Assembly (NCBI RefSeq): GCF_000150275.1
Contig: NW_002060948.1
Location: 2,286,180-2,350,179, forward strand
Origin: Trichoplax adhaerens
Lineage: Eukaryota; Animalia; Placozoa
DNA length: 64,000 bases
Reading direction: 5' to 3'
The notes under the pieces were generated by a model that worked only from the letters and a program-made list of their open reading frames with translations, did no database searches and was not told the origin of the DNA. Both the position numbers and the translations under genes were made by a program. This document shows positions 10,171-62,547 of this stretch, piece by piece (position 1 is the first letter of the stretch; every line of letters starts with the position of its first letter).

Positions 10171-10218
10171 GCAAATCGCCAAGTAGCAATGCGGTACAGT
10201 ACAGTACTGTATTTAGTC

Positions 10219-11712: not shown

Positions 11713-14298
11713 ATGATCGGCGGTATTTTCATTTATAATCACAAGGGTGAAGTTTTAATATCCAAAATCTATCGCGATGATATTGGGTAAGTTTCAGAGC
11801 AATGATAAAAATAGCTGCTCCATCTGTGATTGGCAATTTAATTTAATATCATTTTAAAATCGTGATTTTTGGTCTTGCGAATTTGTACTATAAAAGCGAA
11901 TTATTATCATATAGAATGATAGAAATTCACCCTGTTGTTACTATACACGGATTTTACAGTTATGATGGCATTGATTCGTCATTTCTGTGCCCGATACCTT
12001 GGATCAGTAATAGTGATAATATATTTTTCCTTCCTTTTCAGGCGATCCGTCATTGATGCATTCCGCGTCAATGTCATTCATGCTCGTCAACAAGTACGTA
12101 AACCAGTCACCAACATCGCTAGAACCAGTTTCTTCCATACTAAACGTGGAAATGTTTGGGTAGCTGCAGTATCCAGGCAAAATTGCAATGCTGCTATGGT
12201 TTTTGAAATGATTAACCATTTGTGCAACAGTTTTGTCTCTTACTTCGGTAAAATTAATGAAGATTCAATCAAGAATAACTTTGTATTAATATACGAATTG
12301 TTGGATGGTAAGCCTGAATCATACACTTCGTTAAATTATTTTTGGAAATAGTTTTAAGATTATTACCTATTAATAGCTGTAGCAATAATATCTTTAGCTT
12401 TAAATTTGTAATTTCCACCTTGGTAATGCTATTTTTTAGAAATGGTCGATTTTGGCTATCCTCAAAAGACTGATGTTGGAATCTTGAAAACTTTCATCAC
12501 ACAACAAGGAATTAAATCAACTGTAAGATATAATACTGTAACTTTCGCTTCTAAAATCATACCTATACATTGTCAGACATGAAAATCTAGTGGTACTTAA
12601 AATTAAGAAATGTCAATTTCTTGCAACTAATCTAAAATTAACGTTATCGAATTCTTTGCCCAAGATAACTACGGAAAATATATTACAATTCACTTTAGTT
12701 AATAGTACGTTTGGGTAAACTTATTTATACAACATTAAATGTAATTGTTACCTCATTGCTGGATGTTTTATAGACGAGAGAAGAACAAAATCAACTTACT
12801 AGCCAGGTCACTGGTCAAATTGGTTGGCGTCGTGAAGGCATCAAGTATAGAAGAAACGAATTGTTGCTTGACGTTTTGGAAAATGTCAATTTATTAATGT
12901 CCGCACAAGGTTATGATTGTGTCCAATTGACTTATAGACTATTGTATCGTAATTATTGGATAGTTACCATATTGAATATAACAACACACAAATAATGCTG
13001 AAGAGTTAAACATATTGTATTTGAAAGATTTTGTTATCGTAATGTTGTGTAGGTCAAGTACTAAGTGTTCATGTATCCGGACGAGTCATCATGAAAAGTT
13101 ATTTATCAGGAATGCCAGAGTGTAAATTTGGCATGAATGATAAAGTCTCTGTGGAAGGCCCAGCAGGTGATGCCAATGCTGAGCGAAGAAAGATAACGAA
13201 GCCTACAATTGCTATAGATGATTGCAATTTTCATCAGGTTTGAATCAATTTATTGCTCTGATACTTTGTGTCCGACGACTTCCATTATGAGTAAAGCAGT
13301 ATTATCTGATGTAATGAATACCAATGAATTTTTTTAATTTTATATAATCGTCATTTGATAGTGTGTTAGACTTAGTAAGTACGAGACGGAACGGAGCATT
13401 AGTTTTATACCGCCCGATGGAGAGTTCGAGTTGATGAAGTGAGTATAAAGTTATAAAAAATTCTTTTCTAGCGGTTGATTGTCCATCCCATAAATCATTT
13501 TTTTTTTGAATCTAAACAAATATTATTTTGGTGTAGATATCGTACCACAAAAGATATTAGCTTGCCTTTCCGTATTATTCCCTTGGTTAGAGAAGTGGGT
13601 AGAACAAAGCTGGAAGTGAAAGTAGTATTGAAATCGAATTATAAGCCTCAACTTTTTGGCCAAAAAATTGAGGTTTGCAATTACATGATCAGGAAAGGGT
13701 GTAATTTATATGACATAGCGACACCTCGTAACAGATAGTTATACGCACATTTTATAGGTAAGAATCCCTACACCAAAGTCTTGTTCTGGTGTGCAGCTTT
13801 TATATCAGAAAGGAAAAGCAAAGTATAAATCGAGTGAGAACGCTATCTTATGGAAGTAAGTCTTTCAATTAGTAATATTTTATGATTCAAAGTTCAAATT
13901 CTCATGAATACAAATTTCATTCGCTATGCAAAAAAAGGATAAAGCGAATGGCTGGCATGAAAGAAAGTCAAATTAGTGCAGAAATTGAACTACTACCTTC
14001 GTCAGATAAGAAAAAGTGGAATAGACCTCCTATCTCCATGAATTTTGAGGTGATATCTTGTACTAGTAATTATTAAATAGTCATTATCTTATTATTTATA
14101 ATTTAAATGGTGTTTTCGACTCTCCTATTCTATTATTGTTACACGGTATAATTTCTTTTGTAGGTTCCATTTGCTTGTTCTGGATTGAAAGTGCGCTATT
14201 TGAAAGTATTCGAACCTAAGATAGGTTATAGTGATCAAGATACTATCAAATGGGTGCGCTATATTAGTAAGAGTGGCTCTTACGAAACTAGAACATAA
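11713..14298 (+). CDS. AP2M1: AP-2 complex subunit mu
   Basis: Exons 11713-11786 ([25 protein letters not shown]), 12042-12307, 12440-12522, 12774-12909 ([21 protein letters not shown]), 13053-13237 ([18 protein letters not shown]), 13362-13438 ([13 protein letters not shown]), 13537-13672, 13758-13855, 13938-14049 ([11 protein letters not shown]), 14164-14298 ([17 protein letters not shown]). Confidence 0.98.
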
Positions 14299-16186
14299 AG
14301 TCTACCGTAATCGATAATATAGCGAATAAATTTATGTTGTGCAAATTCTATTATTGGATTGCATGGCTTAGCACGAATGTATTAGTTATTCTATCGTTAA
14401 GTATTCTAAGTCACTTTCTTTGTTGATATTTCTTGGATTTATGTTTGCATTTAGTCAATTTCGATATGTTTAGATAAATCAAAAATACCATTTAGTTATG
14501 GAGATGTACAGATATTAATTTACCAGCCCTTGTTATTGTGACGTATCTGAATAATTGGAAAGACATCACATTTGGTTATTAGTACCTTATACTGTAGTGT
14601 AATGATAAGTAAGCTATTTCATAGAAAGCTAAAATGATATATGACGATTTAACCGAATGATGATATTTCTTTTTGCCGTAGTTTTACGTAACTAGCTGTT
14701 CACTAAATTGATTCAAATATTCTTGATATATAATTATATTTAACTGGCTGATTTACTAATTAGAACTATCTAAATAGTGAATATTCGATTTAGTTCAATG
14801 ATCAATAATTTTACTATTGTAGTGATCCCAAATCAGCTGTAAGGTTTTCCATTTAACATGGTTAGATCGTGTTGGTAATTTGTAGTCTATTTTCAACTGT
14901 AAAATTAGCCGTGACGCTAAAAAATAAAATTAAGACTGGTCGTTACCATTGGATTCGAGAGTGCGTACTGTAATAGGTTAAGATATCATTAGATATTAAT
15001 AATAACTCAGAAAATAATCATCAAGGACAAATTTAGCTGTTTTCCCTTATTATAGTAAGTTTAAGTAGTTTTATTTAATGTAAGCTAGCATGCTAAATTA
15101 ATGGCTACATAACCATTACAACATACAAAACTTGATGAAGACATAAAATGGAAGATCAACAACTATAATACAGGCTGTTATAATATTGGCGCCAATAAAA
15201 AAATCATACAAGCTAAATTTCGACCCTAAAAGAAAGCTATTAATAAAAGTAAAAATAATATCAACCAAGCATGTCTAAAAATTAATTACTGCAGAATACG
15301 CGTATTTATCACTACTACAATTCTGTATTATTACTGTAAAATAAACATAAATGTAGGACTGTCAGCTAGCCATAAGTTATAGTATTTGTGAGAGAAAATG
15401 TTACAGCCATTAAATAATAATCAAAACAAGTCAAGGTGATCTACAATTGCAATCAATCAGAAGATGTCATTTATGAATTCAGATACCGGAACAATGGTGA
15501 CCACGAAAATTGTACAGGTAGAACTGGGAAATACATATAGTTTACTTAATAATCACAATACCTTAATTCTATTTTTAATTATGCTATCTCCAGTAAAGAC
15601 CTGTTTCGATGTTGTTGATAGAATAACACTAATAAAATTAAATAAACGTAATATCGACAGAAAGAGTGCAAGAAACAACGATAACATTTTTTAGTAACGG
15701 TAATTCTATTATAACCCATTACACAGATTAATTAGTACATGATTAAGGATCGGATTGAATATTCTTATACCAGTCAAGTTAAATGAGCTGTTAGATAGTG
15801 ATGCTATATTTTTGTTAGCCTTGACTGCCATATTATTGGATGGTTAACTGATGTTACTGTTATCGTCATATGAGCATAGAATATGATTAAGGGCATTCTG
15901 GGATTATGATTACTTCTTATTGCAGTGTTATATTTAATAAGTTAGCTATATTTTCCAACCTTGTTTCAGTTTTAAGTTTCCCTTCACTAATTGATATTTT
16001 CTATACTAGAGTGCGTTTTTCTTCTCATTGCTTAAGGCAATGGGATATTATGTAATGGTTTAAGGTTGAGTATGGATGCATTTACGAATAGCTTTTAATA
16101 TCACACTACGGATGTTGCGGATATAGAAATTAAGTATGATATCCTTCCAATCGTTTTAATAAGTATCCGCGATGACTTGAAAGCAT

Positions 16187-19100
16187 TCAAGCCCCAACTA
16201 AATGGCCGGAAAATGAAGTTCTTTGTTGAACGGTGATTGAATGACCAGAAATATTTTCAACATAAATGCCAACTGTGTGGCCAGCCTATTAGGAGTAAGA
16301 AATATATAACTTAATTTAACAAATCAATTGGAACAGATGTTATACCACTATAAGGGCAAAAGTCATGACGGAAATAAGATAAAGGCAATCAGCCTTTTCT
16401 ATATTGTGTACTTTTTCTTTTCAGAATCCTAAGAACATAGTATGAGAAGGGTGTAGAAAGGAAGACTAGTCACAAATGCTATAATGTTACAGATCAATAC
16501 GGATACGTTAAGTGTATAAATGAGTTGTTCTTCGGAGGCAAATCTTATAAATCTGAGATCACGTGTAAATATGATAATATTACCTGATGGTAACAATATT
16601 AAGCAAGACTGAACACTTTATCAAGACAATTTGATAAATCTCCATTTATAAATATATAATTAATAGAAGTAAAAGATTTACTCGTTGATAATTTCCATTC
16701 AGACAAATATACAGTACTTGAAAACTAAAGAGAAATTGTTATTAGTACAGTTAATATCTTAAGCCTATCGTCTATTAGAAGGTTTTATATGATTAGCTTG
16801 GGTAGGCTAGTTCTCTAGGTCAGTCATTAATTTATATTGATATAAAATAGTGAAGTTTGGATAGCAATTAAAGTTGTCGTTTGATATTTGAAAAATGTTA
16901 AAATTTAGGAATACTCACAACTCATTGAGATTGGTGAGAATATGTTTAAATATAGTCGTATGATCTTATGATGTAAAATTTTAATTTAGATCTCAGTGAC
17001 TTGTGACTATTCGGTACGAATGCTTGTAAAACTTAAATTTTTGGTAAATACTAAATGATAATTTTAATTGTGAGTACAATAATAGAATTAATATAGCTAC
17101 TTCCACTAATGGGATGGTTACCTCAACGTATAAAATTCCGTCGGCATAAAGTGTAAACTGTCGGCTGTTAGGAGATATGCCGGATACGTATTTGATTGAC
17201 CTATTACGTGTGCAAGAGAAGTCGATGCAGATATAAGCAGTAACATGTTCGTTCCTGGTGAGAATAGTTGATGGTGAAATTGAATGATGTAGATGAACCA
17301 ATCCAGAGAAACGATAAATAGCTGAGTATGGAGCAATAAATAAGCCTTTTTTCACATCGACTCCATTCCCTCGCATGAAAGCACCACGATGTGATGGCTA
17401 TTTAGTAAAGGAATAGGCATTAAAAATTAGGATATAATTTAATATTCTGCATAAATTAATTACAATAACGTATAGAATAGACTTACTTGAACATAGTTAG
17501 TTAATAGCTTTCGCGTGCCATGGTCAATATTAATGGAAGAATGTAATTCCATATGGAAAGCAGATGGAATAACAGCAATAGGCGCTTTACTGAAACTTAA
17601 ATGATCTTGTGCTTTCTAAACGCAATTTAAAAAGTACTATTAACATGTATTACAATGTTTCTGTTAATATTTTAGAGTTTGAATCTTACCTTGGTTATAT
17701 ATGTGAAAATATTAACGCTGGATTGATTTCTTTTAACGCACAAGCCACACTGGACAATTTAAAATGTTATAAAAGTTAGAATAAACTTACTATGGCATCG
17801 TGATAATATTCCAATCACAATTAAGAATTACCTTTTCAGTTGCTGTAAAATATTCTGTATTGACAGGGTCAATTATTTATAACATTTGAAGAAAAGGTGA
17901 ATATGAGATTTATAATAAAGGAAATTATATTAATCAACTCTAATAATTTTTTTTGCTACCAAATATTGGAGTATAAATTAGTTTATTCTGCTATGATTAA
18001 TTAATAATATATTCGTTTGGATCTTACATCAATAATATCAGATTTTGGACTACAGCAGTGTAGAACAATTTGCGAGTAATATCAATTTGATCAAATTTAG
18101 ATCGGTATAAATAGTGATATAATGCGATAGTAGATATGTAAATGCCTTGACTATACTAATAAATTAGTTTAATTTGTTTTGAGTTGGGTACGAATACGAG
18201 CAAAAAAATAAGTAACTGAGATACTAACCTTCGAAGACTTCACGTATGACTGCAATGACATCGGCTTTCGCTATATTTTTTCCAGGTAATCCCGGTGGTC
18301 CTGGTGGTCCACCAGCTCCCTTAGGACCAGCCTATTGATCAATTTAGCCAATATATGTACTTGTTAAGAGTGATACCACGAAAAGTATTATCTAATATAC
18401 CACCATAATATTCTTGGAGTATTACAATAGTTTATTTTTATGTATATACAAGTTTTGAGTTGACTTGAATTTACTTACAGGACATGTAATCGGGCAATCT
18501 TGCAATTTTTTGCGTTCTTCTTCTTTTGCTTTTTCCAAAAAGTCTTTCCATGCGCTAAATGGGCTCTTGGTAGGTGCTTTTGAGCTCTAAAAGCCATGAA
18601 ATAACGATAATTAATATATGATTGGTATTCTATCGTTAGTAGATATACTGATTACGGGTGATAAGATTGAATATCGGTACTATATAGCATGATAGTCTTT
18701 TACTCTCTATGCATTCATTTACCACCTGTGCATAGTCTTTACAATTCTATCTATTTAGGTCTATATTGTTACTGTATGTAATGTAGATATCCTCCAAATT
18801 TGGAGTTTAATAAGGATTGCATGCATAAATTGATGGTCTTTTGTTATTTCATGGTGTATTACCCAGCTGTAAAGCTTTATTATTGTGTCTATCTTATATT
18901 GGATGTTTTATTCTCCTTTCTATATCTGTTTCTCAATACAAGCCGTCGAGTTATTATGAAATCGTTAAAGCTCTCTTTTGAGGGCTAAAAACCTTAAGTA
19001 TATCGACCGAAGATTAATAATAATGCAGGATTGCCATCATATGGACTACTCAAAATTACTAGCAGTCATTTTTCGTAACCTATGGCTACCACAATGATTA

Positions 19101-22100
19101 TAATTTTGGTACATGTTCCGTCAATATTTTTACAGTGTCTGTTATCCCCTAATGCATCTATGCTTTTTTTAATATCTACTCTAGGTTTATGGAATAAAGG
19201 GCAGTAAAAAAAATCTAGAGCTCTCCAATAAAAGCCAGCTGCCATTGGCCTGTTGCCTGGATATGAATCAATATTAGCGTCATATGATAGCTATCATCAT
19301 CATCAGTAATCTATACACGTCGACAATCTATATGGAGCTTTCTATCGTCTACTTTAGAAATAGTTTATAATGAGCTATTATAATAGGAGAAAAAGCTATT
19401 TTTATAGAGCATAAAGATAATTCAAGTTAATGAGGATTTAAAGGCATGAATAGCTACCGCTATTTGTGTTGAAGATATTATTTATAGTAGTTGTTATGAT
19501 GTAAAAGGAATAAAGTATGGACTTATGTGGAAAAATTTTTTCTCTATTATTCTTAATCATTACAATCATGATGAGGACCTTTTACTTTGCCATTTCATCA
19601 TTATTATCGTCATGAAGAGTTCACCTATTCTAGTGGGCACAATAGACGACAACTATAGGTTATAAGTTAATAAATTGTCTTGTTGATCTGCCCCATACCG
19701 ATTATGATTGTTCGTATCTTACCGTAGGCAAAATTTGCTAAAATAAAATTTGGATAACAATCGTCATTGACTCTAACCGCCATGTCTGTAGTGACAATAG
19801 ATAGCAAAGGAATAATGAATAATCACAGCTTTTGACTTGAGGATAATCAATAGACTCGAAAGCCACAAAGGTGTGATATATTGCCAATGACAGACAACAT
19901 GAAAAATATTAACATGCAATGGTGTCCTGATAACGAGGCAGATCGTCAAAATCAAATAGGATAAATTCCACTTGATCGTGATATCAGTGAAGAAAAAAAT
20001 GTGTTCAACTGATTCGACGTTCAGCCTTAGCCTTTTATACTTATTATTTTAAAAATTGAAAATGTATTACAAATAGAATAATTAGAAAAGAAAAAAATTG
20101 ATTATCGAACGATTGAAATTCGATAATTATTTGAATGCCTATCGGTTTGCTGTAATTAACATGGGTAGATCCATTTTAAATGGAGATAAATTGGATATGA
20201 GTCTATGATTGAGGATTAATCCGTGAGAGATTAGCACTTCAATATAGAATATTAGCAATAATGGAATTCAAGCAGTTGGATTAGAAAGAGCGATTCATAA
20301 CGGTTAGAAAGCTGATTTAAAAATGCTTTCACTGAAATCCTGTTGTTGCAAGTATCGATATCGGTTAATTATTACTTAATGAAAGTGATGATGATGGATT
20401 TTAAAGCTAAGATATTGTAATGAAAGATTTTATAATCATAGTTAAAAAGGTATTAAAATTGACTAGATATCATTTGAATGCATTAAAATCAATTAGAAAA
20501 CAAAGCAGTTACTCGATAGTAAATGATTCCTCAGGTAGTTACTAGGTAGTAAATTCCTACAAAAGTGATTAATGTGATTGATGAAAGGAGAATTAATAAT
20601 GGTAATAGCTCCAGCGAATCTACTGTTAGAAAACTAAAAAACGAAATTCCAATTTTGCTTGACATATTTATGTATTACTGAACAAGTAAGCGTTAGTTGA
20701 ATTAAAGATGAAGAGATTTACAGTGTTATACTACTATAAAATGGAATTAAGCTGATGAATGTAGCAAATTTATCAGGATATTATTGGAATGTGATGGAGG
20801 AGGAGACTTGGTTGATATCACGTGGGAAAGTCAAGGATTAAACGTGGGTAAATGGCGAAGGATGAACTTGAGCTAGAAATGCGATAGACAAGTAATTGAC
20901 GAAAAGACTTTGATAGAAGCTAAATCCATTCCTGAACTAGTTATCCTTGGGGAAACTACCGACACACTAGTCAGTTTGGAAACTTTACTTTACGTACAGT
21001 AAGGTAATATAGTATTTTAATGTTATACTGAAAGGATGAAAAATTAGTCAAATATCATTTTTTATTCTATAAAGATAGATGATATCTCATAAATGGAGAT
21101 AGTCGAAAATTGTAATCAGGTAGAAATGATTCAATTTTCAACTGTCAAATAAAAAACTAAAGAGAATGAATTGAAGTGTAAAACTACGAATTTATCTATC
21201 GTTTTTCCCTTAAGGGGTTCGATGGTGAAGCCTAGGTGAAAATCACCTCATGGATAATTGTAGCCATTTCTCAATGCATCGATACAATCCAGCTAAGAAA
21301 ATAAAACTATGAATGCTAACATGGTAATTATGGATAATTTGTAATCAATTAGGCACACATACAAAGAAAATCCTTTTTCAAGGTGATTGAAAATTAAAAC
21401 AATTATTAGTGAATTATCTTTATTCATTTGTAGTTCTATTGACTATTGCCATTGTCCAATTTTGATCAAATTGACATATTGTGATGACTGTGTTATGTAA
21501 TGTAGTCATAATTGACGTCTTTTCCCCTTCGCCTCGTTGCCTTGTATCAAAAATTGATTAATTTCTAATTTAAGAGATAGGATGATGAGCATCGATTGGA
21601 GAAAAATTGTTTCATCATCTTATTCTGATGGCACACCAACGCATTGAATAGAATGAGATCAATGCATGTCTAGGTTGAACAGTGATAAAATTCATTTTCC
21701 ATAGCTGAGAGAAAGTGATTACAAAAAATTAAAATAAAAAAAAAGGAAAGAAAGAAAGAATGAAATGTCATTCTTGTCCATATTTGTTCTAGTCATGATG
21801 GCACAGTAGAGCATAATGAAAATGATGATCAACATCGGGTAAAAGACATTTCACGCTTTAGTGAATCAATCTCAATTTATTTTAGGTCTAAATTCGACGT
21901 TATAAACTAAAAATAAATCTGGAAAAAGTCCTAGGATTGAACTGGTGTAATTATTATCACCGATTGAGATGATAAAATTATTCTATAATGAAACTTTGAT
22001 ATATTTTTACGGACATTAAATACAAGTAGTCTGTTCTATCTTCACTTCCGTTTAACATTCTAAAACCGTGTACCATTGTTGGAGCTTTCTGTAAATTTAC

Positions 22101-38580: not shown

Positions 38581-38919
38581 CAATGAGGAACATTTATGTT
38601 TACCACCATTCCACACTTAGCCACGTATATCATTGACTACATGTATTATGTTAGCAATTGGACTGGATCATTTCTAATAATTCTACAATAATTAACAAGC
38701 AAGATTTCTTAATCTTAATCCCTCTTGTTTTCATCTTGTCTACTTTTATTTGATCGACGTCAACGTTGAATCGTTCTTATCATCGGCTTACTAGTTGCCA
38801 AGAAATAGCTTTGATTGCAAGCTTATTCATCTCCATTAAAATTCTAATTGAATCTACAGCTCCCCAGTACTGTCTTGAAAGTAGAATTCCATTTACAATA
38901 CACGACCAAACGAATAAAT

Positions 38920-49600: not shown

Positions 49601-52600
49601 AAAGTATAAAATGATACTAGTGTATACCCCTAATCGCATTGCGTTGAGAAGTTACGATTACTAAAATTTGCGTTGACTAATGTCTATTTAATACATAAAA
49701 TGATGTTAGTACCTAACTTGAATCGCAAATTAGATATTAAATCATGCCACTGATTAGAGATTTTCTTGATTTTTGACTTTTTATTGTTAATGGGCAAAAG
49801 AAATAATGAGTACATACTCACTATGGATCAAGAAAGGCTATTAAGAAAGATGATAGGCAAGATCTTTAGATTTTTAAAGGATGATAACAGACGAATGGAA
49901 GAATTGTTGAATCAGATAAGAATTATTATAAAGCAAAAAAATTGGGTAATTAATGCTTGTATATTAGCAAATTGAGTATGGGGTATTATTCATTAGGTTA
50001 ATTAGAGGTATCTAAATTATTATTTTGCTCGCTAATTGTCCGTGAAAAGCTAATACTCTATATATTGTAGTATCTATTCAGCTTTTCGACTAGAAAATAT
50101 TAAAGACTATAAATAAGAATTAAGCGATTGAAATTTATTTCGGGCTATACCGTATAGATTATGATCTTGATTCGCTAATATTGACACGAAGCTGATAATA
50201 AAGCAACTCTTTGCCTTTACTGTATAAACAATACCAAATCCGGAATAGGCTGGATTAATAGGCTAGCAAGCCTTCACTTTTTGCCAAGTGACTGATAACT
50301 GTATTGCATTGATAGACTCAACTCGTTAATTTGTCTCAGAAGGAAGATATAGCCACTGCTATCGCCAACTTATGGATTAAAGGTAAGATACCAAGATCAA
50401 ATTTAGTTTTCAAGCAGAAGATAGCGGTAAGCAATTTATACTGTAGTTTATTTAGTTTTTGTATAAATGAGCTTTCCGCACAAATACTTTCGATAATTTG
50501 ATACAGTATGTGATTAATTAATCAAGGTGATTTATTATTTTTGATAAATAAGCTTTATGTATGACAATTAGGAATATTTTCGATAATTTAATACGATTTA
50601 CAATTAATTAATCAAGATGATTTATTGTTTTGATAAATGAACTTCTGCACAGCTATTACCAATATTTTCGATAATTTAATACGGTATACAAATAATGATG
50701 ATTTATTATTTTTTCGATAGACGAGCAGTCTGTATAACTTTTAGCAACATTTCCGATATTTTGTAATTAATCAGGATAATTTACTATTTATTTCAGTGAA
50801 AGAAAAAGAGTATTCGAATACTACTGAAAATAATAATTCGACTACTGCTGAAAAAAAGGATTCGATTACTGCTAAAAATCTAAAATTTGCCTTAAAATGG
50901 GGCTGCGCAAATTTAGCGAGAGACCAAATAGAGAAAATGAGCTCATATGAACTGTCGGTGAGAATATTGAATCAACGGCTCATATTTTAATAGACAGCCC
51001 ATCATAGATAGCATACTCTGCGGAGCTTTTGGCCCAGACCAAATTTAATTTCTTAATATTGAAAAACTATCTGAAATTAGATTTGTGGAAGCCTATCATA
51101 TTTACTACTTTTGCATTCTGTTTGGTTTTTTGAGGCTAGTCTGAAAATTGTTGGACATTGATTGAAGAATCCATCAGTAACAACCGAGTAGAATGTATAG
51201 CAGTATTGCTAGAGAAGCTTGTTAATATTGATGATTTCTTAACGATAGCGATATTAAAAAATATGTTAAATAAGGTATGGTACTTTAAGAAATTTAAATG
51301 GATAATATGTTCGTGCTAGGGTGGCATTCCTTGCTAGCTATAGCTGAGGATTATTGTTATCGATTCTATTTTTAGTAAGTTGAGATATTTTTTGTAGCTA
51401 TTACTGCCAAATGGAGCGGCTCATGTAGATTACAAGAAAGCTTTCGAATTTCTGAAAATGATGAAATCGAGTCAAGATAATTATAATACATATTTGTACC
51501 CTTGGATAATTGCAGAAAAAACAGTACCAGATGGCCATAACAGAATCCATTGTGATACAGGTTAGTACGGATAAATGTTTGAAAGTACTGAAATGATGTT
51601 TGAAAAATGAATTAGATTTCTCCTATTGATGTTTAAGATTTCATTTCAGCAAGTCAATTAAAAAATAGTCTAAAGATCTATTATTAGTCCTCCTGTTGAT
51701 GAGCCTTAATTAATTAGGCCACCAAGAGTAAGAAATAGCTTATAAATGTTTAGAGTAATTTGCCTTTTGCTCTTTAATCTTTATTCATTCCGACATGTCT
51801 GACTATTGATTATAGGTCAAATAAGAGCCTATAAATTATTCATATGTAAAGCAACAATGTTTTTAAAAGAATATAAGATTACATAAAATTGTGATTGAGA
51901 GATTTTTCAATCTGAGTAATTTTGTTAATATGCTTGGCAATCTTAATCAATATTGAAAGTAATTTTATCGCGCCACCTTTGCATATCGACTATGATAATG
52001 GATACTCTTTACTTGTAATAACAGATGTTTTCCATCACCTATTTGTTCTGTGTGTTTTGAGCCAACGCTTTGAAATGGCTATGAAGATATGGGAGCGTTC
52101 ATCGCATCAAATAGCCACCGCTTTGGTTGGGAAAAAATTAGTTGATAGTATTATTGCGCAGATTAATTTTAAAAGGGACACATCGGAATTGCAGGAAATG
52201 TCAGGGTAGGTTGATTAAAATTGAAATAAAATGAAATTCAGATCCATCGTGATGATTAAGCTTAGTGGTGTAATTCTATCGAGTGAGTTAATATGTAATT
52301 TTGTGCATCTTTAATTATAATACTACAGAAAATTTCAAGATAAAGCTGTTGAATTACTAGAAACTTGTTATCAAAACAGACTTTCATTAACGTCTATACT
52401 TATAACTACTCCAATTCCGGCTTGGGGCGGCAATAACTGTCTAAGATTAGCAGCTTCTAGTGAAGCAACTACCTTTATTGCTCACGTCTGTTGTCAGCAT
52501 TGGCTAGAGAATGAGTGGGTTGGCAATACTACAGCAAAGATAAAAGGAAGAGTAAGTTACTATTGACTACTGCTGGAGTTAGTAGTCTAGAATTAGCAAG

Positions 52601-55077
52601 CTTTGCATTATATCTTAGTTTGCTGTTATAAATTTAAAAATTCTATCTAGTAGAAATATTTATTGCTTGACTAGAATATGAATTATTTAAGGAACGAAGG
52701 GGATGGTGTAATAACTTAAAGTTATGTGACTACTGCGGTATCGTATTACTCTGTCATATCTAGGAGGAGGGATCATCCAAAGCAGATTTCAATTGCAATC
52801 ATTTTAAAGATTCTTGTTTAAAGTCACTACATGAAATTTGGAAATTCCTAAATGTTCCTAGAAATAAATTTTTCATTAGCTGGGTAAAGAATAATTGAAT
52901 AAAGCTGCTGTACTAGTTAAATAAGGACTATATATTACTAGTGTTGCCTCATGACAGAAAAGGCATCGCAGGTTGCAACTAGTTTTACATTTTTAAATAA
53001 TTTCATTCTATGTATTGGATGGCAATATTTATATATTTGGTATACAATGCCTGAAATTAGCATGAATACTTTTATTTTTGGCTTTTATATAGCTATTTTA
53101 TATTGGGTTCCTAGTATTGTACGCTATAATGATTTTACTACAGCAACTACAACCACAGATTTCATCATTGGAAATCGCTCTCTTAATTTGGCAATCTACG
53201 ATATTCATCGAATTTTCCCTGAAGGTAAAATAATTGAAACAAATTAGTCGGTATATAATAAGTGATTTGAACTATAAATTATCGACGATTAAAGATAATA
53301 ATTTAGGGCTAATTTCTTGAAATAATTTTGTGTTCTCGTTATTAGTTCCTTGGCTCCAACAAACTACGATCTAAACCACAAAAAAAAATTAAGAGGCTGT
53401 ATAAATTAGAAACAATCAACATTCTTCTCTTTTGGCTCTGTTTACTTCGATTTTTTTCAAGTCTTTTTGAAGTTGCTCGAATTTTCTATTGCTTCAATTT
53501 TGCTGTATATACCGTAAGAATTTTATCAGTCTGCAATGCAAGCGTTCACTTAGGACCAAGATTACTAATACTAAAGTCTGTGGTAGGAATGAAAATCTCT
53601 TTACTGACACTAACTACTTTTCGTCACTCATTGTGTTGCATTTAAAAACAATTCTAATCATTCTCACGTGAAGGTATATCTATAAATTGTCTGATCTATC
53701 TTCTTTGATGCTCTCATAATCTAGACGAAAGAAATTGGCTTTTTTTTGTTGTTGCTAGTTATTTTCATGATCAGTTATAGTGTGGCTAACTTCGGAATAC
53801 TACAGGCTTCACAAACGCCCCAGCAGACAATTTATTCTCTATTTGCTGTTCCATATTGGAACATGTTTGGAGAATTGGATATCGACAGGATCACAGGTGC
53901 CCTTCCTTTCATTTATTTACGTTATGTCAATAAAATAACTAAAAACTTCGTATGACAGTACAAAGAGAGTTGGAGAGTTGGCTTTATTATTTCTAGAGAT
54001 CTCAAATGAAATCGATAAAAATAGCTATTACTGAATATCTAATTTTTAGGAATGGATCAGGGCTGTTTTTTAAGTAATAGAACTATTGGCATTGATGGTA
54101 AACCTTGTCCTCGCAATATATGGCTAGCTCTACTTATGTTGGCAATCTATATGATTATAACAAACGTTTTGCTTTTGAACTTATTAATTGCCGTGTTCAA
54201 GTAAATAATTAGTAAACTTAATAATGTTTAAAACAATCTGATTATACTTATAGATCTAATCATTTTAATCTTTAACAGTCCATAGTCTACGGTATTACAA
54301 GAGTAATTTTATTTGCTTCCTTTTCGAATTGCAGCTATAAAATCAATTGATTCGGATAATTTAAATTGCATTTTAGCAATATTTTCACAGAGGTTGATCA
54401 AAATTCTAAAGAACTTTGGAAATATCATCGATATGAGATGATTCTGAAATATAAACGCAAATCACCCTTTCCTTCTCCCTTTTCCATCATTGGTATCTTA
54501 ATAAATTGTTGTCGAGGAAAATTAGGGGCAGTAGATCAAGAAGGGCGTAAGTGTAATAGATAATTGATAGTGCTGCAATTTCAATATAATCGCTAATGAA
54601 AGTTAGCAGTAGCACTAACAAAAATGTCCGATACTGAGCAACATAAGTAATCCATTCTCAGTCGAATTCGATAAAGGCTATTCTAATTCATGAATTAATA
54701 AATTAATTATTATCAAATACCAATCACTTCAGCATCCACAGCCAAGCAACGTGAACACAAGTTATTTCTAAAATTTGAAGTAAACTGCTATCGACAAATG
54801 CTAAGGAAAAATTTAGTAGCTTCTGAACTAGGCACGACTAAGGAAAATGAAAAATCTAGGTAGTATTTGAAAAGCCTATTAGCTAACCCTAATGATTCTC
54901 GTAGTGGCTATTCGAGAAATTTATTGTGTTATTCATATAGTTACCTTGTTTCTTTATCTTAGCTATGCCGATGAAATTGATGCCCAAGTAGATGTCTCAG
55001 ATTCAGAAAATTCATCAGAAAGACAAGCAACAAACAGAGCAGATAATAATTCTAAAACATCAATAACGTGTGTTTAA
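46603..55077 (+). CDS. Transient receptor potential melastatin (TRPM) family cation channel
   Basis: Multi-exon gene. MHR motifs CTCG...PTDAYGSIEF, VILSIGGG, WLLTCG, CIGVAPWG, LDPYHTHFLLVDDGSHGRYGTEIEFRAMLE, VVLEGGP, IEGSGRA. S1-S6 with pore PYWNMFGELD, S6 NVLLLNLLIAVF and TRP box WKYHRY. Last exon 54963-55077. The start exon 46603-46632 (MSTMDKVDDP) is less certain. Confidence 0.93.
49554..49710. repeat. Intronic direct duplication, period about 88 bp
   Basis: CGTTGAGAAGTTA..ATTACTAAAA.TTG.GTT...CTATTTAA...ATAAAATGAT..TAGT occurs twice in a TRPM intron. Confidence 0.85.
50447..50795. repeat. Intronic tandem array, about 4 units of 80-90 bp
   Basis: Recurring TTTATT.TTTTTGATAAAT.A.CTT...TTTCGATAATTT.ATAC...ATTAATTAATCAAG.TGA, ending at the TRPM acceptor near 50796. 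Confidence 0.85.
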
Positions 55078-56398: not shown

Positions 56399-59300
56399 TC
56401 ACTTGTTATCCTGGTTTAAGCATTTGACAAACTCTACCAATCTACTCTGTATGTGCTTGACTTTTTCTGTAAGATAAAAAAAATACAGTTACATCAGGAT
56501 AGACCCTAATTTACAGTACAAGCATTTCAGAAAATATATACGGTTAAGGTAAAAGGAGGTCTTACTTAGTTTTTCAGCTAGAATAACTTGATCTCCAGTA
56601 AGAAGTTTCTTTTTACAGCTATCATCATCCTCTATTTCGTCAAGCGCTTGCTTCGCTTCTTCTTCTAGTCTTCCAAATTCATGGTTTACTACTTGTTGCC
56701 GTAAAAATCTGCTGCTACTGTTCAGCATTGATTGCATTCTCCAAAATAATACTACGGCATCGCATTGCAACTATAATTTTTAGAGTACATGTAGAGAATA
56801 TTATTATTGTTAGGCATTGTTTCGCATACCTTCCCATTTATGTCTTACCTCATCATTTCCTAACTTCCGGTGAAAAAATGCACCTTTGCATTCTTGGGCT
56901 TCCGCTATAGCCATCTGCAAAAAATGCTTTCGATACTGCAAGCGCCATATCTCTTCAATCTTAATCATAATAGAAAGATATACTAATGAATCGAAAATGA
57001 CAGTTGCTATACGATTACAAATATTTACCAGTTCTTCCGAAACCGTATGTCCTTGCGTTTCTAGGTTTCTTTTTACCATTATTACTTCATCGAAATCTAA
57101 GTGTGACTTATGACTCTATTAAACAATATATTTAGCGCATTAACCTAACAATTTCTTGAATATATGGCTTATAACTAATAAAGGAAAGAAAAGGCTACCT
57201 TTCGACTTTGTAGCAATTTTTGAAATTCTAATCCTGCTGCTTGTCGTAACAGCTACAAATACGATCGCAAGGCTAAATTAGCTAAGAGTTATCGTTTTAT
57301 TGCTCTAAAACAGCTGATAATGCAAGAAAAATATACTGTACTAATCTCAATGACTAGTAAATATACCTGCTCAGGTGTGGTTGATCTCCATGACATCCAC
57401 CTTTCAGTGAAGTTAGGGCCTGTTAGTTGGTTCCACTCATTAATTGCTTGCTTAAGTTTATCGTTTAAAGTTTCTTCCAAGAATTTAGCTGCAGATTCCC
57501 ATTGTTGTTTGTCAGGAACTGATAAATCTTCCAGTGCATTTGACTGGATGACATGCTGCGAAGCAATAATGCGACCAATTACACATTGTGATGGTTCAAT
57601 GAAATATAACGCTAAAACTAACTCACCATTTTTTCAATATTATTGTTTGAGATGGTATGATTTCTGTTACAAATATTAATAACAGCTTCTTTCAGATCAT
57701 CAAATAGCTTGTTATCTACGCTAGACATTCCAGCACTTCGGGAGACAGCAACGTTCTAATGCCCAAGTCAAGTATAGCCAGGCGATATCTTAAAATTTTT
57801 ATAGCAGGAAATCAATTACATAGTTAAGAGGTACTAATACCTTTCGCAAAGCAGCTGCAAATTCATCCAGTAACGTTTCCCATCCAATCTGTGTACATCC
57901 GGCATGGTAGAAACTTACATCAGATACATAGTAGAATATCAAATTTTAAATTAGAATAGTGCAACATACCGTAACACAGTTGCCGGATAAGTGGGACTTT
58001 GACCATTCTTTTAACTTGATATCGGCATAGGTATTAAATTTACTAAAATGAACTGATTATTAGTTTCCTTGCATTTATAAGATTACGTGGGATATGCTGT
58101 ACAATAGGAGCACATTCATACCTAGATGACTCCGTTTGTGCAGCTGGAATATAAATATTTTCTACAAAATGTTCTGAAATGCTGAGCCATAGTTTATCCT
58201 TGAGTTTCGTCTCCCTATAAATATTTATGATAGATACATAAGCAATGATATAAAATAATTACAAATAAGTGACTTTCCAACACATACCATTCCATCGGTT
58301 GCAGTTGACTTAAAGTTAAGACCGTATCTAATATTTCAGCTTTACCTCGATCGAATAATTCATTCTATAACAAAATTATAGTATCGAAATATTTTACTCC
58401 TAATACGTATATAAGCAAGGGCCTACTATTATTTGCAAAACAAACCCTATCAAGCTCTCTCCTTCCAGGAAATCTATTTTTCCATTCAGTTTCTAAGTTG
58501 AATCGGATAGCTAGTCGAAATTGACATATGAAAATTGAATATTAGACGTTAGAGCAGTTAATACGTATAAAACAGAAGTGCATAAAAATAGTGAAACATT
58601 GGAAGTATTTCATGTAGACAAACCTTGGTAACTATCAGATTGTTGTTCTACTGATTCCTTCACCATTTTCCAAAAGCACTCAGAAACTGCACGGCTAAGA
58701 TTTTGAGTATTCATTTGTGTAGCCTTGATAACGTTACTTCTGTATCATCATAGCAAATATACATGAGTAACAAATCACAAGATGCCAGTTTATAGTTTAC
58801 AGTACTATAATAATTGAGTTACTCATGCAAGATATAACGAACCTAAATAGTTTAGAATTTCTGAAGTATTCTTCTTCATGTTGTCTAATAGTCTCAATGC
58901 TGTCTTCGGTGTTACCTTTAAATTTTTCAATAAGGAGTCAACGATTTACAAGACAGAAATGCACATCATTTTGTGATACTAACCTCTACCGGTAACAACA
59001 GCAAAATAACCTAGAGCCTTCATTGGAAATAGTCGTCCTTCCAAAGTTTTCTTTATCTGATCAACAAGAACGGAACAATTTTTAGAGTATCCGTGTAAAA
59101 TAAATAAATATAATACAGCGCCAGCTTTGATTGCTTAATAACATACTCTATCTGGGTTAGCTAGCGATTTCTCTGCCAGATCAGCTTTAGTAAGAACAAA
59201 AATGGTCCTCTTTCCTAAAGTCAGACAGAAGACGCTATATAAGGATAAAAACTGATTCTATTGAAATTTAGACAATTCGACTTGCCATACCTTGCTTATC

Positions 59301-62300
59301 AACGGAGTTGACAAGGTCGGTAACTATACTTCGTTCAGCATCTACGGAACCATCTAAAAACGCATATAATGTATAAGGAAAATATAAATTCTTCTTAACG
59401 GCTACTATGCTAGCTATTACCGGCAGTAACTCTTTAATTGTTATACAACTACTCATTTTTGTTACCTTGAATACATAAAATGATGGAATTTGGATTTTTC
59501 ATGTATTTTCTAAGCAACAGCATACAATTTAATGCTTAATTACAAATTTAGTAACAATATTCAAAATAAAAATAAAAACAACGAACTTGCTCATTTCAAT
59601 AATGTCTTCTCTGGTACTTGTAGCCATTCCAGCTGTTACCGTCTGTAGTAAGGTGATCATAAGAAATGCCAAGTCATTAATAGATCGAAATAATTTTTGT
59701 TAATTAGCACAAACAAATGATTACACTAATTATTCCGGGCAGGTCTACGAGAACCATTCTCTGTAATCCAGGTCCTTTAACACTCATTGAAATAGTCTAT
59801 AGTTGTAAGTACCCAATATATGCGAATTAATTGTAAGTTATTAGCTAGTGCAAGTGAGGTATCGACATTACCGATCTAGATACTAGCATCTACAATAATA
59901 TACGCATAAATAGTACTTACTTCATGGCTAACTGTCTGCCCATTTTGAACGCTGGCTTTCATCCTTCTTTCAACTTCTTGTCTAAGGGCGTTCAACTATA
60001 GGTAATCCATCATAACGGATAGTGTTTTATAGTTAAATTTGGTTAGAATAAAGTGATAATACAGTATTGGCGTGGTATATACCTCAGGCTCCTGATTTAA
60101 GTCATACTCTCGGTCGTTGTTTTTAAATTGTGCAATATGGCGCGGACCTTCAGATAAAGTTACCATAACAGGAGATCTTGTCATCATTTCACCAGAGCCT
60201 CTGGGAAATATTCTTGCTCTTGCAATCATTTCTAGGACACTGGTCTTACCAGCACTTTGATCACCGACAACGACAACCTGAAATATATATTTCGAAATTA
60301 ATACAGGGAATGTGGTTATGGAGAAATTCATCAAAAAGGAATTGGAAAACTAAAACGTAAACAAATTTTGGGTGATTATACGTGTATTACATATAACTAG
60401 CTAGTGGTAGAGGAAACTAATATACCCGGGGTAAGCTATCCTGGGTATCATAATTGGCGTCGTAGTCAGCCAATAAATCCAATACATCTGAATACATGTC
60501 AATCAGAGATTTCTTGATATATTTAGCTTTTTCACTTTTTCCCATCTTCAATATTTGCTGTCGTAAGTCTCTATTAGTCTTTTCAAGCCTAAAAGGAGCA
60601 TTGAATGTCAGGAAATAGTATATTATTGTTGGATGCATACCTACATAAACTTTTCTACATCTATATGCGTAATTTATCTATTTCATATACGCATAAACAC
60701 ATAATTACATTAAAATTTGCTAACAATTTCTGCCAATGGAGAACTAAAATAACCATATTTATCATTCTTTTACACAGTATTTTCTATTCTTACTTGTCAA
60801 TTTCATGTTGTAAGCGTTGTTGAATTTCTACTAATTCACGTTCGGCCTTATCAGCCCTTTCTTTTAGGCTTTCTTTATCCGCTGCATCTTCACTCATAAA
60901 ACTGTTCTTAGGTACTGTATGGTCTTCATTGGAATTATTATTATTATCTTTGTTAAATACATCTGAAAAGATCATTTTTAAAGTAAGCCTTTTGAAGGAA
61001 ACAGCAATCGATATCAAGATCAGATCCACATCGTCAATTCTTATTTAAATTTACTCTCAAGAAAGGACTTGCTGGCTTGGGTTTTGTCGCTATCGGCGGA
61101 TTCTATCAATAATGCAAGAGCTGATTAGTTCATAACAGTAACAATTTAATTTTCTGGATATAGTGTAGCCTTATTTACTACTGAAATGATGTACATATCT
61201 ATCTTGACGATAAGTAGATCAAATGAGTACGCTAATGGCCATAAACACTTATATACGAGTAATAATAACATTTTTGACTCTTCTAAGTAATCAATCATCA
61301 CTGTAGTAGTTACAAGTTCGATTGGAATTTAAAACTACCATAAAACTTACGTAGCATTTGAGATAGTGTAGTTTTAATTCGAGCCAACGAATCGCTTAAG
61401 CCATTGGCCCAGGTTAAGTCAGGTAAAGAGCTTTTTAATGCGTCATATTTCTGTAGTGAATTAAATGGTTTGAAGAATAGTATTTTGATTAGTTAATTCG
61501 AGATACGAAACAGTAATTACTATTTCTGTTGCAACCAATGAAGAAGTTAATAACGGTATTTTCATCAACTCATTTAAAGTATGAGCTAGCTATCATATTA
61601 GTACCATTACCAACGAAATTGTTTAAACTATTTAAGCAGATTAAATCGGGTCAAGAGCTATTAAAAGAGTTTATAAACTAGTCTTATTTCTACAATAGAT
61701 TGAATAGTTGTTAGGCAAGGTACGAGTATTGCTATTATTTCTTTTGGAGTGTGAGTTAACCATTTTAACTAGGCATTAACAACGTGTTATCCGAAAAACT
61801 GAGTTAATTATATGATCAATCGATACACTGTCAGTTGCATCCATTTACCACTTTGACATAAACTCCAATACCAACAGCGGAACCAAGAATAATATATCGT
61901 GGTTTGACCAGCCATAGAAAGGGAAAGGAAGTGGTTCCTTTGGTAGTCTTTTGGCTACAATATCGCCTTAACCATTGTCGTTGTCGACCATTACAAGGTC
62001 TGTGGTTATTGAGTACAGGAGTAGCGATGGATCTCGATCGCACCCTAGATAGAATATGGATCCAATTTCAAAATTACTCTACTATTACAATAAACGACGA
62101 ACATTGTGTATAGCGAGTAACTTATTTCAAAGATTTATCAAGTTGACTACGGTCAAAAGTAATTATGGAGCATGATGCAATGGCTAAGCATATTGAATTT
62201 AATCGTCGACGCTACAAGGCGTAGTAGTGCTACGATGGTACCTATTATCGTTATAATTGAAGTCCTTTTTGTAAAATTTTAGTCTCTTTTACCGTCGTTA

Positions 62301-62547
62301 AAAGTAATGTATCATTTATGAAAGATATTTTATGAAGAATTGGATCAATATCAAAACGTTCAATCAAAGTATAGTGGCATAGACTAAATTATAGAGGCAT
62401 ATTCTCGATGCATGGGAAATTTGCAATGACATCATCAACAGTACAAGTATCTGGCCTATCGACTCGATATCTTATTGCATAACGCCTAACAGACATTATC
62501 TTAAGATCAGTACTCTACCTGCAGGTATAGGTGCATAATCTATACAT
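56399..62547 (-). CDS. OPA1: Dynamin-like GTPase OPA1, mitochondrial
   Basis: First exon 62547-62519 ([10 protein letters not shown]) joins a basic presequence-like stretch and a TM segment ([16 protein letters not shown]). Conserved [16 protein letters not shown]1 [37 protein letters not shown]3 [23 protein letters not shown]4 [41 protein letters not shown]...LRQQV; stop at 56399-56401. Confidence 0.97.

What the first reader, a model, noticed from the sequence alone, without database searches (positions are those of the whole stretch)
11713..62547. Ancient HES-centred linkage block: AP2M1 - FAM132 - CEP19 - HES - TRPM - OPA1
Seen in the sequence: these six genes lie within about 51 kb. Established knowledge (recalled): human AP2M1 is at 3q27 and OPA1, HES1 and CEP19 are at 3q29, with OPA1 and HES1 near neighbours. 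C1QTNF12/FAM132A is at 1p36.33 near HES4/HES5; ERFE/FAM132B is at 2q37.3 near HES6; TRPM8 is at 2q37.1. Inference: this window preserves a single pre-duplication block whose pieces survive around several vertebrate HES paralogues. It may be a genomic regulatory block with HES as the target and housekeeping genes as bystanders.
Basis: partly seen in the sequence, partly recalled or inferred. Interest (0 to 1): 0.8.

Follow-up and report, generated by a model that had tools for sequence, protein, structure and literature searches.

The report
Trichoplax HES neighbourhood mirrors human paralogon
The six genes are really there, in the placozoan Trichoplax adhaerens, but the cluster is one stretch of a megabase-scale, already documented kind of conserved linkage with human chromosomes; only the HES-OPA1 and HES-adipolin pairs look like retained close neighbours, and nothing yet shows a regulatory block.

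Summary
The window is Trichoplax adhaerens, scaffold C1409 at 2.286-2.350 Mb. It carries AP2M1, an adipolin/FAM132-type gene, CEP19, the genome's only Hairy/E(spl)-type HES gene, a TRPM channel and OPA1 within 51 kb.

- The genes do map to the vertebrate 1p36/2q37/3q26-29/17p13 paralogon.
- The linkage is not a special 51-kb block. SKI and SDHB lie just upstream. A P5B ATPase, mitofusin, DVL, class-IA PI3K and p53 lie on the same scaffold at 2.49-4.04 Mb.
- Five of six detectable, pre-chosen marker families fall on this scaffold (P about 3e-6). This is the macrosynteny already published for Trichoplax.
- Within the region, Trichoplax and human distances do not correlate, so order is scrambled.
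- The TRPM link to TRPM8 fails: there are at least 10 TRPM loci and no TRPM8-specific similarity.
- Real residual proximity is plausible only for HES-OPA1 and HES-adipolin. HES-OPA1 are adjacent in vertebrates and were proposed as a regulatory block in 2009.
- For a regulatory block I found no support. CEP19 introns hold no conserved non-coding sequence. Adipolin loci in five other invertebrates have no block gene within 10 kb.

The scan has about 20 similar linkage notes in this genome. Exons were never joined, so no full-length phylogeny was made.

The parts
11713..14298 (+). AP2M1 (AP-2 mu subunit) gene; human orthologue at 3q27.1 (position recalled)
   Evidence: Pfam Adap_comp_sub on exon pieces. 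PDB AP-2 mu E 1.5e-41 against AP-1 mu 2.3e-9. Start and stop read.
16187..22620 (-). Adipolin/FAM132 (C1QTNF12/ERFE)-type secreted gene. It has a signal-peptide-like exon, a short collagen stretch (18227-18331), and C1q/TNF-like exons (16996-17397 and 16190-16285).
   Evidence: Exon pieces. HMMER scan against all representatives gives 52 hits, and all named top hits are adipolin. Those hits carry weak Pfam C1q and collagen matches. The H2 annotation calls a 305-aa product here. PDB cerebellin motif, E 0.06.
31418..32956 (-). CEP19 gene, four exons; human orthologue at 3q29 (position recalled)
   Evidence: PF14933 E 2.3e-27 and 1.7e-5. 99% identical to Trichoplax sp. H2 CEP19, 178 aa. Small exons at 32381-32442 and 31909-31973.
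38533..38919 (+). HES promoter and 5' region, the only non-coding stretch found conserved with a divergent placozoan lineage. The 72% alignment runs from 38533 into exon 2 at 39269.
   Evidence: blastn of contig L030 against the window. HES introns do not align.
38920..40610 (+). HES gene (Hairy/E(spl) type): basic region with proline, bHLH, Orange domain, terminal WRPW. Four exons. It is the only such gene in the genome.
   Evidence: Pfam HLH and Hairy_orange. PDB HES-1 E 5.4e-12. The genome search finds no second HES-type bHLH. The other two Orange-domain loci are HEY-like and HELT-like. TRIADDRAFT_57355 matches at 100%.
47055..55074 (+). TRPM-family channel gene (approximate ends). It is one of at least 10 TRPM/SLOG loci in the genome and is not specifically TRPM8-like.
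   Evidence: Pfam LSDAT_euk, TRPM2-like and Ion_trans. 22 SLOG matches at about 10 loci. PDB hits: zebrafish TRPM2 9e-14, TRPM7 1e-11, TRPM8 1e-8.
56400..62514 (-). OPA1 gene (approximate ends); human orthologue at 3q29, adjacent to HES1
   Evidence: Pfam Dynamin_N and OPA1_C on three exon pieces. Human adjacency from PMC11031983 and PMC2707624.
7122..7755 (-). GTF2H2 (Ssl1) exons. This gene lies between SDHB and AP2M1, and its human orthologue (5q13, recalled) is outside the paralogon.
   Evidence: Pfam Ssl1 E 5.6e-21 and 1.9e-8.
1610..3801 (+). Ankyrin-repeat gene of unresolved orthology
   Evidence: Pfam Ank on exon pieces. Repeats read.

Best explanation
This is a correctly read gene neighbourhood of Trichoplax adhaerens. 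It belongs to a megabase-scale segment of scaffold C1409 that descends from the same ancestral animal linkage group as the vertebrate 1p36/2q37/3q26-29/17p13 paralogon.

Shown here:
- The genes are real.
- HES is single-copy in this genome.
- The paralogon's marker genes sit on the same scaffold.

Inferred:
- The six genes lie together because placozoan chromosomes have mixed little between linkage groups. That makes any run of neighbours here likely to map to one human paralogon.
- After the two vertebrate genome duplications, the single ancestral segment became four. Differential loss left AP2M1, CEP19 and OPA1 beside HES1, adipolin and SKI near HES4/HES5, and ERFE beside HES6.
- Within the segment, order is largely scrambled.
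- Two pairs are probably remnants of ancestral close linkage that have simply not yet been broken: HES-OPA1 (one gene between in Trichoplax, adjacent in vertebrates) and HES-adipolin (one gene between in both Trichoplax and human 2q37.3). I put this at about 60-65%.
- No selective or regulatory constraint is needed to explain what is seen.
For: - Gene identities.
- Organism.
- Flanking genes: SKI/SKIL-type gene about 12 kb before the window, SDHB just before it, and a RAP1GAP-type gene at 2.227 Mb.
- Markers chosen beforehand from the human paralogon, all on C1409: p53 at 4.040 Mb, mitofusin at 2.759, class-IA PI3K at 3.327, DVL at 3.088, P5B ATPase at 2.489.
- Five of six detectable families are on a scaffold that is 5.66% of the genome, binomial P 3.3e-6.
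- Distance correlation with human is absent: chr3 set rho 0.02, p 0.37; chr1 set rho -0.14, p 0.87.
- Published background: Trichoplax scaffolds preserve ancestral linkage groups while order is scrambled (PMC8809688).
- Vertebrate adjacencies: ATP13A4-OPA1-HES1-...-ATP13A3 within 960 kb (PMC11031983); the Opa1-Hes1 synteny block from mouse to zebrafish (PMC2707624); the order ERFE-ILKAP-HES6-PER2 (PMC12748216).
Against: - Most human coordinates other than those three loci are recalled, not looked up.
- The 100 kb downstream of OPA1 holds only lineage-expanded families (lectins, GPCRs, M1 peptidase), so the paralogon signal is patchy.
- The KIF1-type marker is not on C1409.
- The CEP19/HES1/OPA1 trio is tighter in human (3.1 Mb) than 98% of triples from the chr3 set. 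Together with the two HES-adipolin proximities, this could point to constraint rather than slow decay.
- I could not examine HES or OPA1 loci in any third phylum.
Confidence: 0.68

Rival explanations
1. This is an HES-centred genomic regulatory block. Enhancers of HES lie in or beyond the neighbouring housekeeping genes (CEP19, TRPM, OPA1, adipolin, AP2M1). Breaks are therefore selected against, and the linkage has been held since before placozoans and bilaterians split.
For: - In mouse, an enhancer trap inserted between Opa1 and Hes1 reports a Hes1-like pattern. The authors describe a 4-gene synteny block centred on Hes1, conserved to zebrafish, and call it a possible regulatory block (PMC2707624).
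- HES has about 6 kb of gene-free DNA on each side.
- HES-OPA1 and HES-adipolin are close in both Trichoplax and human.
- The CEP19/HES1/OPA1 trio is tight in human.
Against: - Contigs of a divergent placozoan lineage align to the CEP19 gene only at its exons. No intronic or downstream non-coding stretch aligns, although the HES promoter aligns at 72%.
- Adipolin loci in Xenia, Clytia, Hydra, Holothuria and Branchiostoma belcheri show no HES, CEP19, AP2M1, OPA1, TRPM, SKI or SDHB within 10 kb, either by annotation or by tblastn.
- In human, CEP19 and AP2M1 lie about 2.5 and 10 Mb from HES1 with many genes between (recalled), which does not fit bystander status.
- No entry for these genes was found in the microsynteny papers I could read.
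Confidence: 0.12
2. All of it is macrosynteny plus coincidence. Even the HES-OPA1 and HES-adipolin proximities arose by chance within a scrambled linkage group, and no ancestral close adjacency survives.
For: - Trichoplax and human distances show no overall correlation.
- DVL3-AP2M1 and PIK3CA-MFN1 are neighbours in human (recalled) but lie 790 and 570 kb apart in Trichoplax.
- The pairs were picked after seeing the window.
- Vertebrates have HES genes in all four paralogous segments, with several on 1p36, which raises the chance of some proximity.
Against: By a rough estimate of mine, OPA1 being the immediate coding neighbour of HES1 among about 230 genes has a chance of about 0.01. ERFE being within two genes of HES6 among about 130 genes has a chance of about 0.03. 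Jointly this is about 3e-4 before correction for choosing among four or five neighbours and four segments. Gene counts are recalled.
Confidence: 0.18
3. There is no ancestral linkage at all. The resemblance to human chromosome regions is a reading artefact from wrong orthology calls.
For: - The TRPM8 link is unsupported.
- Pfam does not recognise the C1q domain.
Against: - Five genes have strong, specific family or orthologue-level matches.
- The independent markers fall on the same scaffold, P 3.3e-6.
Confidence: 0.02

Closest known systems
Conserved macrosynteny (ancestral linkage groups) between Trichoplax and human: Srivastava et al. 2008 (cited from memory and through PMC8809688); Simakov et al. 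2022 (PMC8809688)
   Same: Genes linked on one Trichoplax scaffold have human orthologues concentrated on one set of paralogous chromosome segments, without conserved order. That is what searches show for C1409.
   Different: Those papers work at scaffold and chromosome scale. In the texts I could read they do not name this HES neighbourhood. Here a specific 51-kb stretch is resolved gene by gene.
Vertebrate Hes1-Opa1 synteny block, a candidate genomic regulatory block (Rochais et al. 2009, PMC2707624)
   Same: HES and OPA1 are close neighbours, a developmental repressor beside a housekeeping mitochondrial GTPase.
   Different: - In vertebrates the two are adjacent across a gene-poor interval of about 480 kb that has enhancer-trap evidence.
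- In Trichoplax they are 16 kb apart with a TRPM gene between them.
- No non-coding conservation or enhancer evidence is available for Trichoplax.
Ancient metazoan microsyntenic pairs (Irimia et al. 2012, PMC3514665)
   Same: The proposal that unrelated neighbouring genes stay together across phyla because of cis-regulatory constraint.
   Different: That survey required conservation in several lineages. Here only placozoan and vertebrate are shown. In the main text, HES appears only as a cluster of paralogues. The supplement was not available.
Vertebrate 2R paralogon 1p36 / 2q37 / 3q26-29 / 17p13, known from families such as TP53/63/73, DVL1/2/3, MFN1/2, SKI/SKIL and PER1/2/3 (established knowledge, recalled)
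   Same: The single Trichoplax copies of these families lie on one scaffold together with HES.
   Different: The paralogon is a vertebrate concept. The Trichoplax segment is its unduplicated counterpart, not a member of it.

Membership tests
Conserved macrosynteny / ancestral linkage group | Orthologues of genes from one human paralogon lie on one scaffold far more often than its share of the genome predicts | tested here: met
   Five of six detectable pre-chosen marker families are on C1409, which is 5.66% of the genome; P 3.3e-6. SKI, SDHB and a RAP1GAP-type gene are in the flank.
Conserved macrosynteny / ancestral linkage group | Gene order within the group is not conserved | tested here: met
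   Mantel tests give rho 0.02 (p 0.37) and -0.14 (p 0.87), using recalled human coordinates.
Ancient conserved microsyntenic block (multi-phylum) | The same genes are near neighbours in the focal genome | tested here: met
   Order AP2M1-adipolin-CEP19-HES-TRPM-OPA1 within 51 kb, with no other gene called between adipolin, CEP19 and HES.
Ancient conserved microsyntenic block (multi-phylum) | The same genes are near neighbours in vertebrates | tested here: inconclusive
   Met for OPA1-HES1 and ERFE-ILKAP-HES6, from the literature. Not met for AP2M1 and CEP19, which are megabases from HES1 (recalled). Not met for TRPM, whose orthology is unresolved.
Ancient conserved microsyntenic block (multi-phylum) | Adjacency is present in at least one further independent phylum | tested here: inconclusive
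   Only adipolin loci could be reached. There is no block gene within 10 kb in Xenia, Clytia, Hydra, Holothuria or B. belcheri. HES, OPA1 and CEP19 loci of other phyla could not be fetched.
Genomic regulatory block (Kikuta et al. 2007 sense) | A developmental regulator as the target, flanked by functionally unrelated bystander genes | tested here: met
   HES lies between CEP19 and TRPM/OPA1.
Genomic regulatory block (Kikuta et al. 2007 sense) | Conserved non-coding elements inside or beyond the bystanders | tested here: not met
   This was a limited test. Divergent placozoan contigs L031 and L032 align only to CEP19 exons, whereas the HES promoter aligns. OPA1, TRPM, adipolin and AP2M1 introns were not testable.
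Genomic regulatory block (Kikuta et al. 2007 sense) | Those elements regulate the target and not the bystanders | not testable with these tools
   Needs reporter assays or chromatin-contact data.
Adipolin/erythroferrone (FAM132, C1QTNF12/ERFE) family | Secreted protein with a short collagen stretch and a C-terminal C1q/TNF-like domain, whose nearest relatives are family members | tested here: met
   Signal-like exon, collagen stretch and C1q-like exons. All named top hits are adipolin, E 6e-15 to 7e-8. Product of 305 aa. Pfam C1q itself is below threshold, as it is in most of the hits.
Hairy/E(spl) (HES) family | Proline in the basic region, bHLH, Orange domain, C-terminal WRPW | tested here: met
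   The two other Orange-domain loci have HEY/HELT-type basic regions.
TRPM8 orthologue | Specific, reciprocal closest similarity to TRPM8, or a single TRPM2/8-type gene in the genome | tested here: not met
   About 10 TRPM/SLOG loci. The SLOG exon scores TRPM2 9e-14, TRPM7 1e-11 and TRPM8 1e-8.

The most novel reading that the evidence does not exclude
HES-OPA1, and perhaps HES-adipolin, is a microsyntenic pair that dates to the placozoan-bilaterian ancestor. It would have been kept together for more than 600 million years because HES enhancers lie in or beyond its neighbours. That would make the vertebrate Hes1-Opa1 candidate regulatory block one of the oldest known.
Probability: 0.12. Interest if true: 0.6.

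Novelty: new member of a known kind. Interest (0 to 1): 0.33.

Why it matters
- The result gives a gene-level picture of the unduplicated counterpart of the vertebrate paralogon that holds HES1/4/5/6/7, TP53/63/73, DVL1-3, MFN1/2 and SKI/SKIL. This helps in reasoning about which HES neighbours are ohnologue remnants.
- It places an adipolin/erythroferrone-type gene beside HES in a placozoan, which parallels ERFE-HES6 in human.
- It also sets a baseline for this scan. In Trichoplax, a window whose genes map to one human paralogon is the expected state, so such findings need a test against macrosynteny before they count as special.
- If HES-OPA1 proved adjacent across phyla, it would be a tractable case for asking whether compact non-bilaterian genomes already use shared regulatory landscapes.

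Tried and rejected
- Pfam C1q on the adipolin exons and on the whole genome gave no hit. The identity was resolved only by the full HMMER scan.
- Word searches with the CEP19 last exon, the HES last exon and full-length CEP19 of Trichoplax sp. H2 returned only placozoan proteins. CEP19 and HES loci of other phyla could therefore not be fetched.
- OPA1, AP2M1 and TRPM orthologues of other phyla could not be reached. Single exons are too short for the length window of the word search, and exons were not joined.
- One look-up of the Clytia adipolin isoform failed and was repeated with the longer isoform.
- Supplements of Irimia 2012 and Touceda-Suarez 2020 are not held. The supplements of Robert 2022 have no entry for these genes.
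- The Trichoplax genome paper itself is not held.
- The vertebrate hes-family synteny paper does not mention OPA1 or PER2.
- The Dishevelled-domain and CG-1 markers gave no hit anywhere, so they are uninformative.
- A piece I read by eye as an oxoglutarate-carrier-like mitochondrial carrier (L010 6197-6457) was not confirmed by Pfam or PDB, so it is not counted.
- Rejected idea: that the ankyrin-repeat gene at 1610-3801 is an ACAP or ASB orthologue. Only Ank repeats were seen.
Full report
**What the window is.**
The window is G000:C1409:2286180-2350179, in an assembly of 105,631,681 bp in 1414 contigs. The last HES exon is 100% identical to TRIADDRAFT_57355 of Trichoplax adhaerens, on a contig of 5,978,658 bp. 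That is the length of C1409. The CEP19 exon is 99% identical to CEP19 of Trichoplax sp. H2. The DNA is about 30% G+C, and genes are split by short introns. All proteins were therefore tested exon by exon, by reference.

**Check of the observation.**
All six genes are there.
- AP2M1 runs from ATG 11713 to stop 14298 on the plus strand. It has Adap_comp_sub matches. Its PDB match to AP-2 mu is E 1.5e-41, against 2.3e-9 for AP-1 mu.
- CEP19 (minus, 31418-32956) matches PF14933 at 2.3e-27. It has two small internal exons.
- HES (plus, 38920-40610) has a bHLH exon with the Hairy-type proline in the basic region, an Orange domain and a terminal WRPW. Its bHLH exon matches HES-1 in the PDB at 5.4e-12.
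- The TRPM gene (plus, about 47055-55074) has SLOG, TRPM2-like and ion-transport matches.
- OPA1 (minus, about 56400-62514) has Dynamin_N and OPA1_C.
- The sixth gene was the doubtful one. Pfam C1q finds nothing on its exons or anywhere in the genome, and the PDB gives only a cerebellin motif at E 0.06.
  - Its exons nevertheless show a signal-peptide-like start, a short collagen stretch and a C1q-like C-terminus.
  - A full HMMER scan of 1.84 billion representatives with the exon 16996-17397 gives 52 hits.
  - Every named top hit is adipolin: Hydra, Clytia, Xenia, newts, marmot, Polypterus and Holothuria.
  - These hits are about 290-350 aa, and the match sits near their C-terminus.
  - They too have only sub-threshold Pfam C1q matches.
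  - The H2 annotation calls a 305-aa product at this place, and no other gene between it, CEP19 and HES.

**Orthology caveats.**
- HES is the only Hairy/E(spl)-type gene found. The Orange-domain search finds three good loci, and the other two have HEY-type and HELT-type basic regions. A search with the HES bHLH exon finds no second copy. The gene is therefore pro-orthologous to all vertebrate HES genes. The question 'HES1/4 clade or not' does not arise.
- The TRPM gene is one of about ten SLOG/TRPM loci. Its SLOG exon is no closer to TRPM8 (1e-8) than to TRPM2 (9e-14) or TRPM7 (1e-11). The TRPM8/2q37.1 link should be dropped.

**Is it a special block, or macrosynteny?**
I read 60 kb upstream and 100 kb downstream.
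- *Upstream* lie a RAP1GAP-type gene, RPL4, a cNMP-binding gene and MRPL2. A SKI/SKIL-type gene lies about 12 kb before the window, and SDHB immediately before it. From memory, human SKI is at 1p36.33 and SKIL at 3q26.2. SDHB is at 1p36.13, and RAP1GAP and RAP1GAP2 are at 1p36.12 and 17p13.3.
- *Markers.* I chose marker families from the human 1p36/2q37/3q26-29/17p13 paralogon before knowing where they lie in Trichoplax.
  - On C1409: p53 at 4.040 Mb, mitofusin at 2.759 Mb, class-IA PI3K at 3.327 Mb, a DVL-type N-terminal DIX at 3.088 Mb, and an ATP13A2-like P5B ATPase at 2.489 Mb.
  - Not on C1409: the KIF1B domain.
  - No hit anywhere: two other markers.
  - Five of six detectable families on a scaffold holding 5.66% of the genome has a binomial P of 3.3e-6.
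- *Conclusion.* At least 1.8 Mb of C1409 is the unduplicated counterpart of this paralogon. This is the conserved synteny already described for Trichoplax. Its scaffolds preserve ancestral linkage groups, while order within them is scrambled and collinear runs between phyla are rare (PMC8809688).
They are unchecked, but they fit the view that such windows are the norm here.

**Is there anything beyond macrosynteny?**
- I used recalled human coordinates for ten genes on each of chromosomes 3 and 1. Trichoplax and human pairwise distances do not correlate (rho 0.02, p 0.37; rho -0.14, p 0.87).
- DVL3-AP2M1 and PIK3CA-MFN1 are neighbours in human (recalled). They are 790 and 570 kb apart in Trichoplax.
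- The four window genes with chromosome-3 orthologues span 12.5 Mb in human, which is unremarkable: 14% of four-gene subsets are as tight.
- What stands out is a core:
  - CEP19, HES1 and OPA1 lie within 3.1 Mb. Only 1.7% of triples are as tight, but this was noticed after the fact.
  - OPA1 and HES1 are adjacent coding genes inside a 960-kb interval flanked by ATP13A4 and ATP13A3 (PMC11031983).
  - ERFE-ILKAP-HES6-PER2 is the human and mammalian order (PMC12748216).
- In Trichoplax, HES-OPA1 has one gene between (TRPM), HES-adipolin has one gene between (CEP19), and the P5B ATPase is 139 kb beyond OPA1.
- My rough estimate for both pairs being that close in human by chance is of order 3e-4 before, and perhaps 1e-2 after, allowing for post-hoc choice. 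I therefore think retained ancestral proximity is more likely than not for these two pairs. That is slow decay, and it does not by itself imply constraint.

**The regulatory-block idea.**
- *In its favour.* In mouse, an enhancer trap between Opa1 and Hes1 reports a Hes1-like pattern. The authors describe a four-gene synteny block centred on Hes1, conserved to zebrafish, and suggest a genomic regulatory block (PMC2707624).
- *Test 1: non-coding conservation.* Metagenome contigs of a divergent placozoan lineage (76-84% protein identity) align to the window over the HES promoter and first exons, 38533-39269, at 72%. Otherwise they align only at HES exons. Over the CEP19 gene they align only at its exons, and not in its introns or in the roughly 650 bp downstream of its stop codon. 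Non-coding conservation is thus detectable at this distance but was not seen in the one bystander I could examine.
- *Test 2: other phyla.* Adipolin loci were fetched from Xenia, B. belcheri, Clytia, Holothuria and Hydra, 198 kb in all. Within 10 kb they contain no HES, CEP19, AP2M1, OPA1, TRPM, SKI or SDHB, by annotation or by tblastn with the window's exons. The Xenia neighbour is OST48/DDOST, whose human gene is at 1p36.12 (recalled). That again points to macrosynteny, not microsynteny.
- *Weight of these tests.* Both tests have low power, but they are the only ones available and neither supports a block.

**Comparison with what is known, and verdict.**
- The kind of thing, conserved linkage between Trichoplax and human paralogons, is known.
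- The vertebrate Hes1-Opa1 block and its possible regulatory nature were proposed in 2009.
- I found no paper that names this placozoan neighbourhood, or HES-adipolin linkage, in four literature searches. The key supplements were not available.
- I therefore class it as a new member of a known kind. It is a well-resolved, correct and moderately informative example, with one wrong link (TRPM8), an over-narrow boundary and an untested mechanism.
- No contig that I took for human was met or handled.

Noticed in passing
window 9100-10500 and 62600-63010; also L010 9000-10000, L011 9680-10000, L012 1-230 and 4998-5315, L013 5294-6257, L017 6946-7810, L033 about 4660-4970: Arrays built on TACAG/CTGTA-type units recur in many intergenic and promoter-proximal places along the scaffold. 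Their translations are full of YSTV/QYCTV. They raise local G+C to about 0.38.
   Followed up: no
G000:C1409:2186180-2224179 (L004-L007): 38 kb reads as N. This is either an assembly gap or a withheld stretch, and it limits the upstream survey to about 60 kb.
   Followed up: no
L012 6409-7935 (C1409:2272588-2274114): A SKI/SKIL-type gene with both the DHD and the Smad4-binding domains in a single 509-codon open frame, about 12 kb before the window. Human SKI lies about 0.2-0.3 Mb from HES5 (recalled), so SKI could be added to the HES-linked set.
   Followed up: partly
L030, L031, L032 (ENA metagenome assemblies ERZ27263980 and ERZ23499115): Short genomic contigs of a placozoan lineage clearly distinct from Trichoplax H1/H2 (76-84% protein identity) are present in public metagenomes. 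They are useful for phylogenetic footprinting of Trichoplax promoters.
   Followed up: partly
window 16996-17397 against L002, L003, L026, L027, L029: The Trichoplax adipolin C1q exon is continuous. In the cnidarian, sea cucumber and amphioxus genes the tblastn match is split at about residue 65 of this exon, which suggests an intron gained or lost at that position.
   Followed up: no
G000:C1389:666461-677864: Two further P5-type ATPase N-terminal matches lie 11 kb apart on another scaffold. They could be a tandem pair or one gene with a duplicated exon. Whether they are P5A or P5B type was not determined.
   Followed up: no
L014-L023 (C1409:2350180-2450179): The 100 kb downstream of OPA1 is filled with C-type lectin, M1 aminopeptidase, adhesion-GPCR-like and rhodopsin-type GPCR genes. 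These are lineage-expanded families that interrupt the paralogon signal.
   Followed up: no
L002 15047-17493 (Xenia sp.): The gene next to Xenia adipolin is OST48/DDOST. Its human orthologue is at 1p36.12 (recalled), in the same paralogon as C1QTNF12.
   Followed up: no
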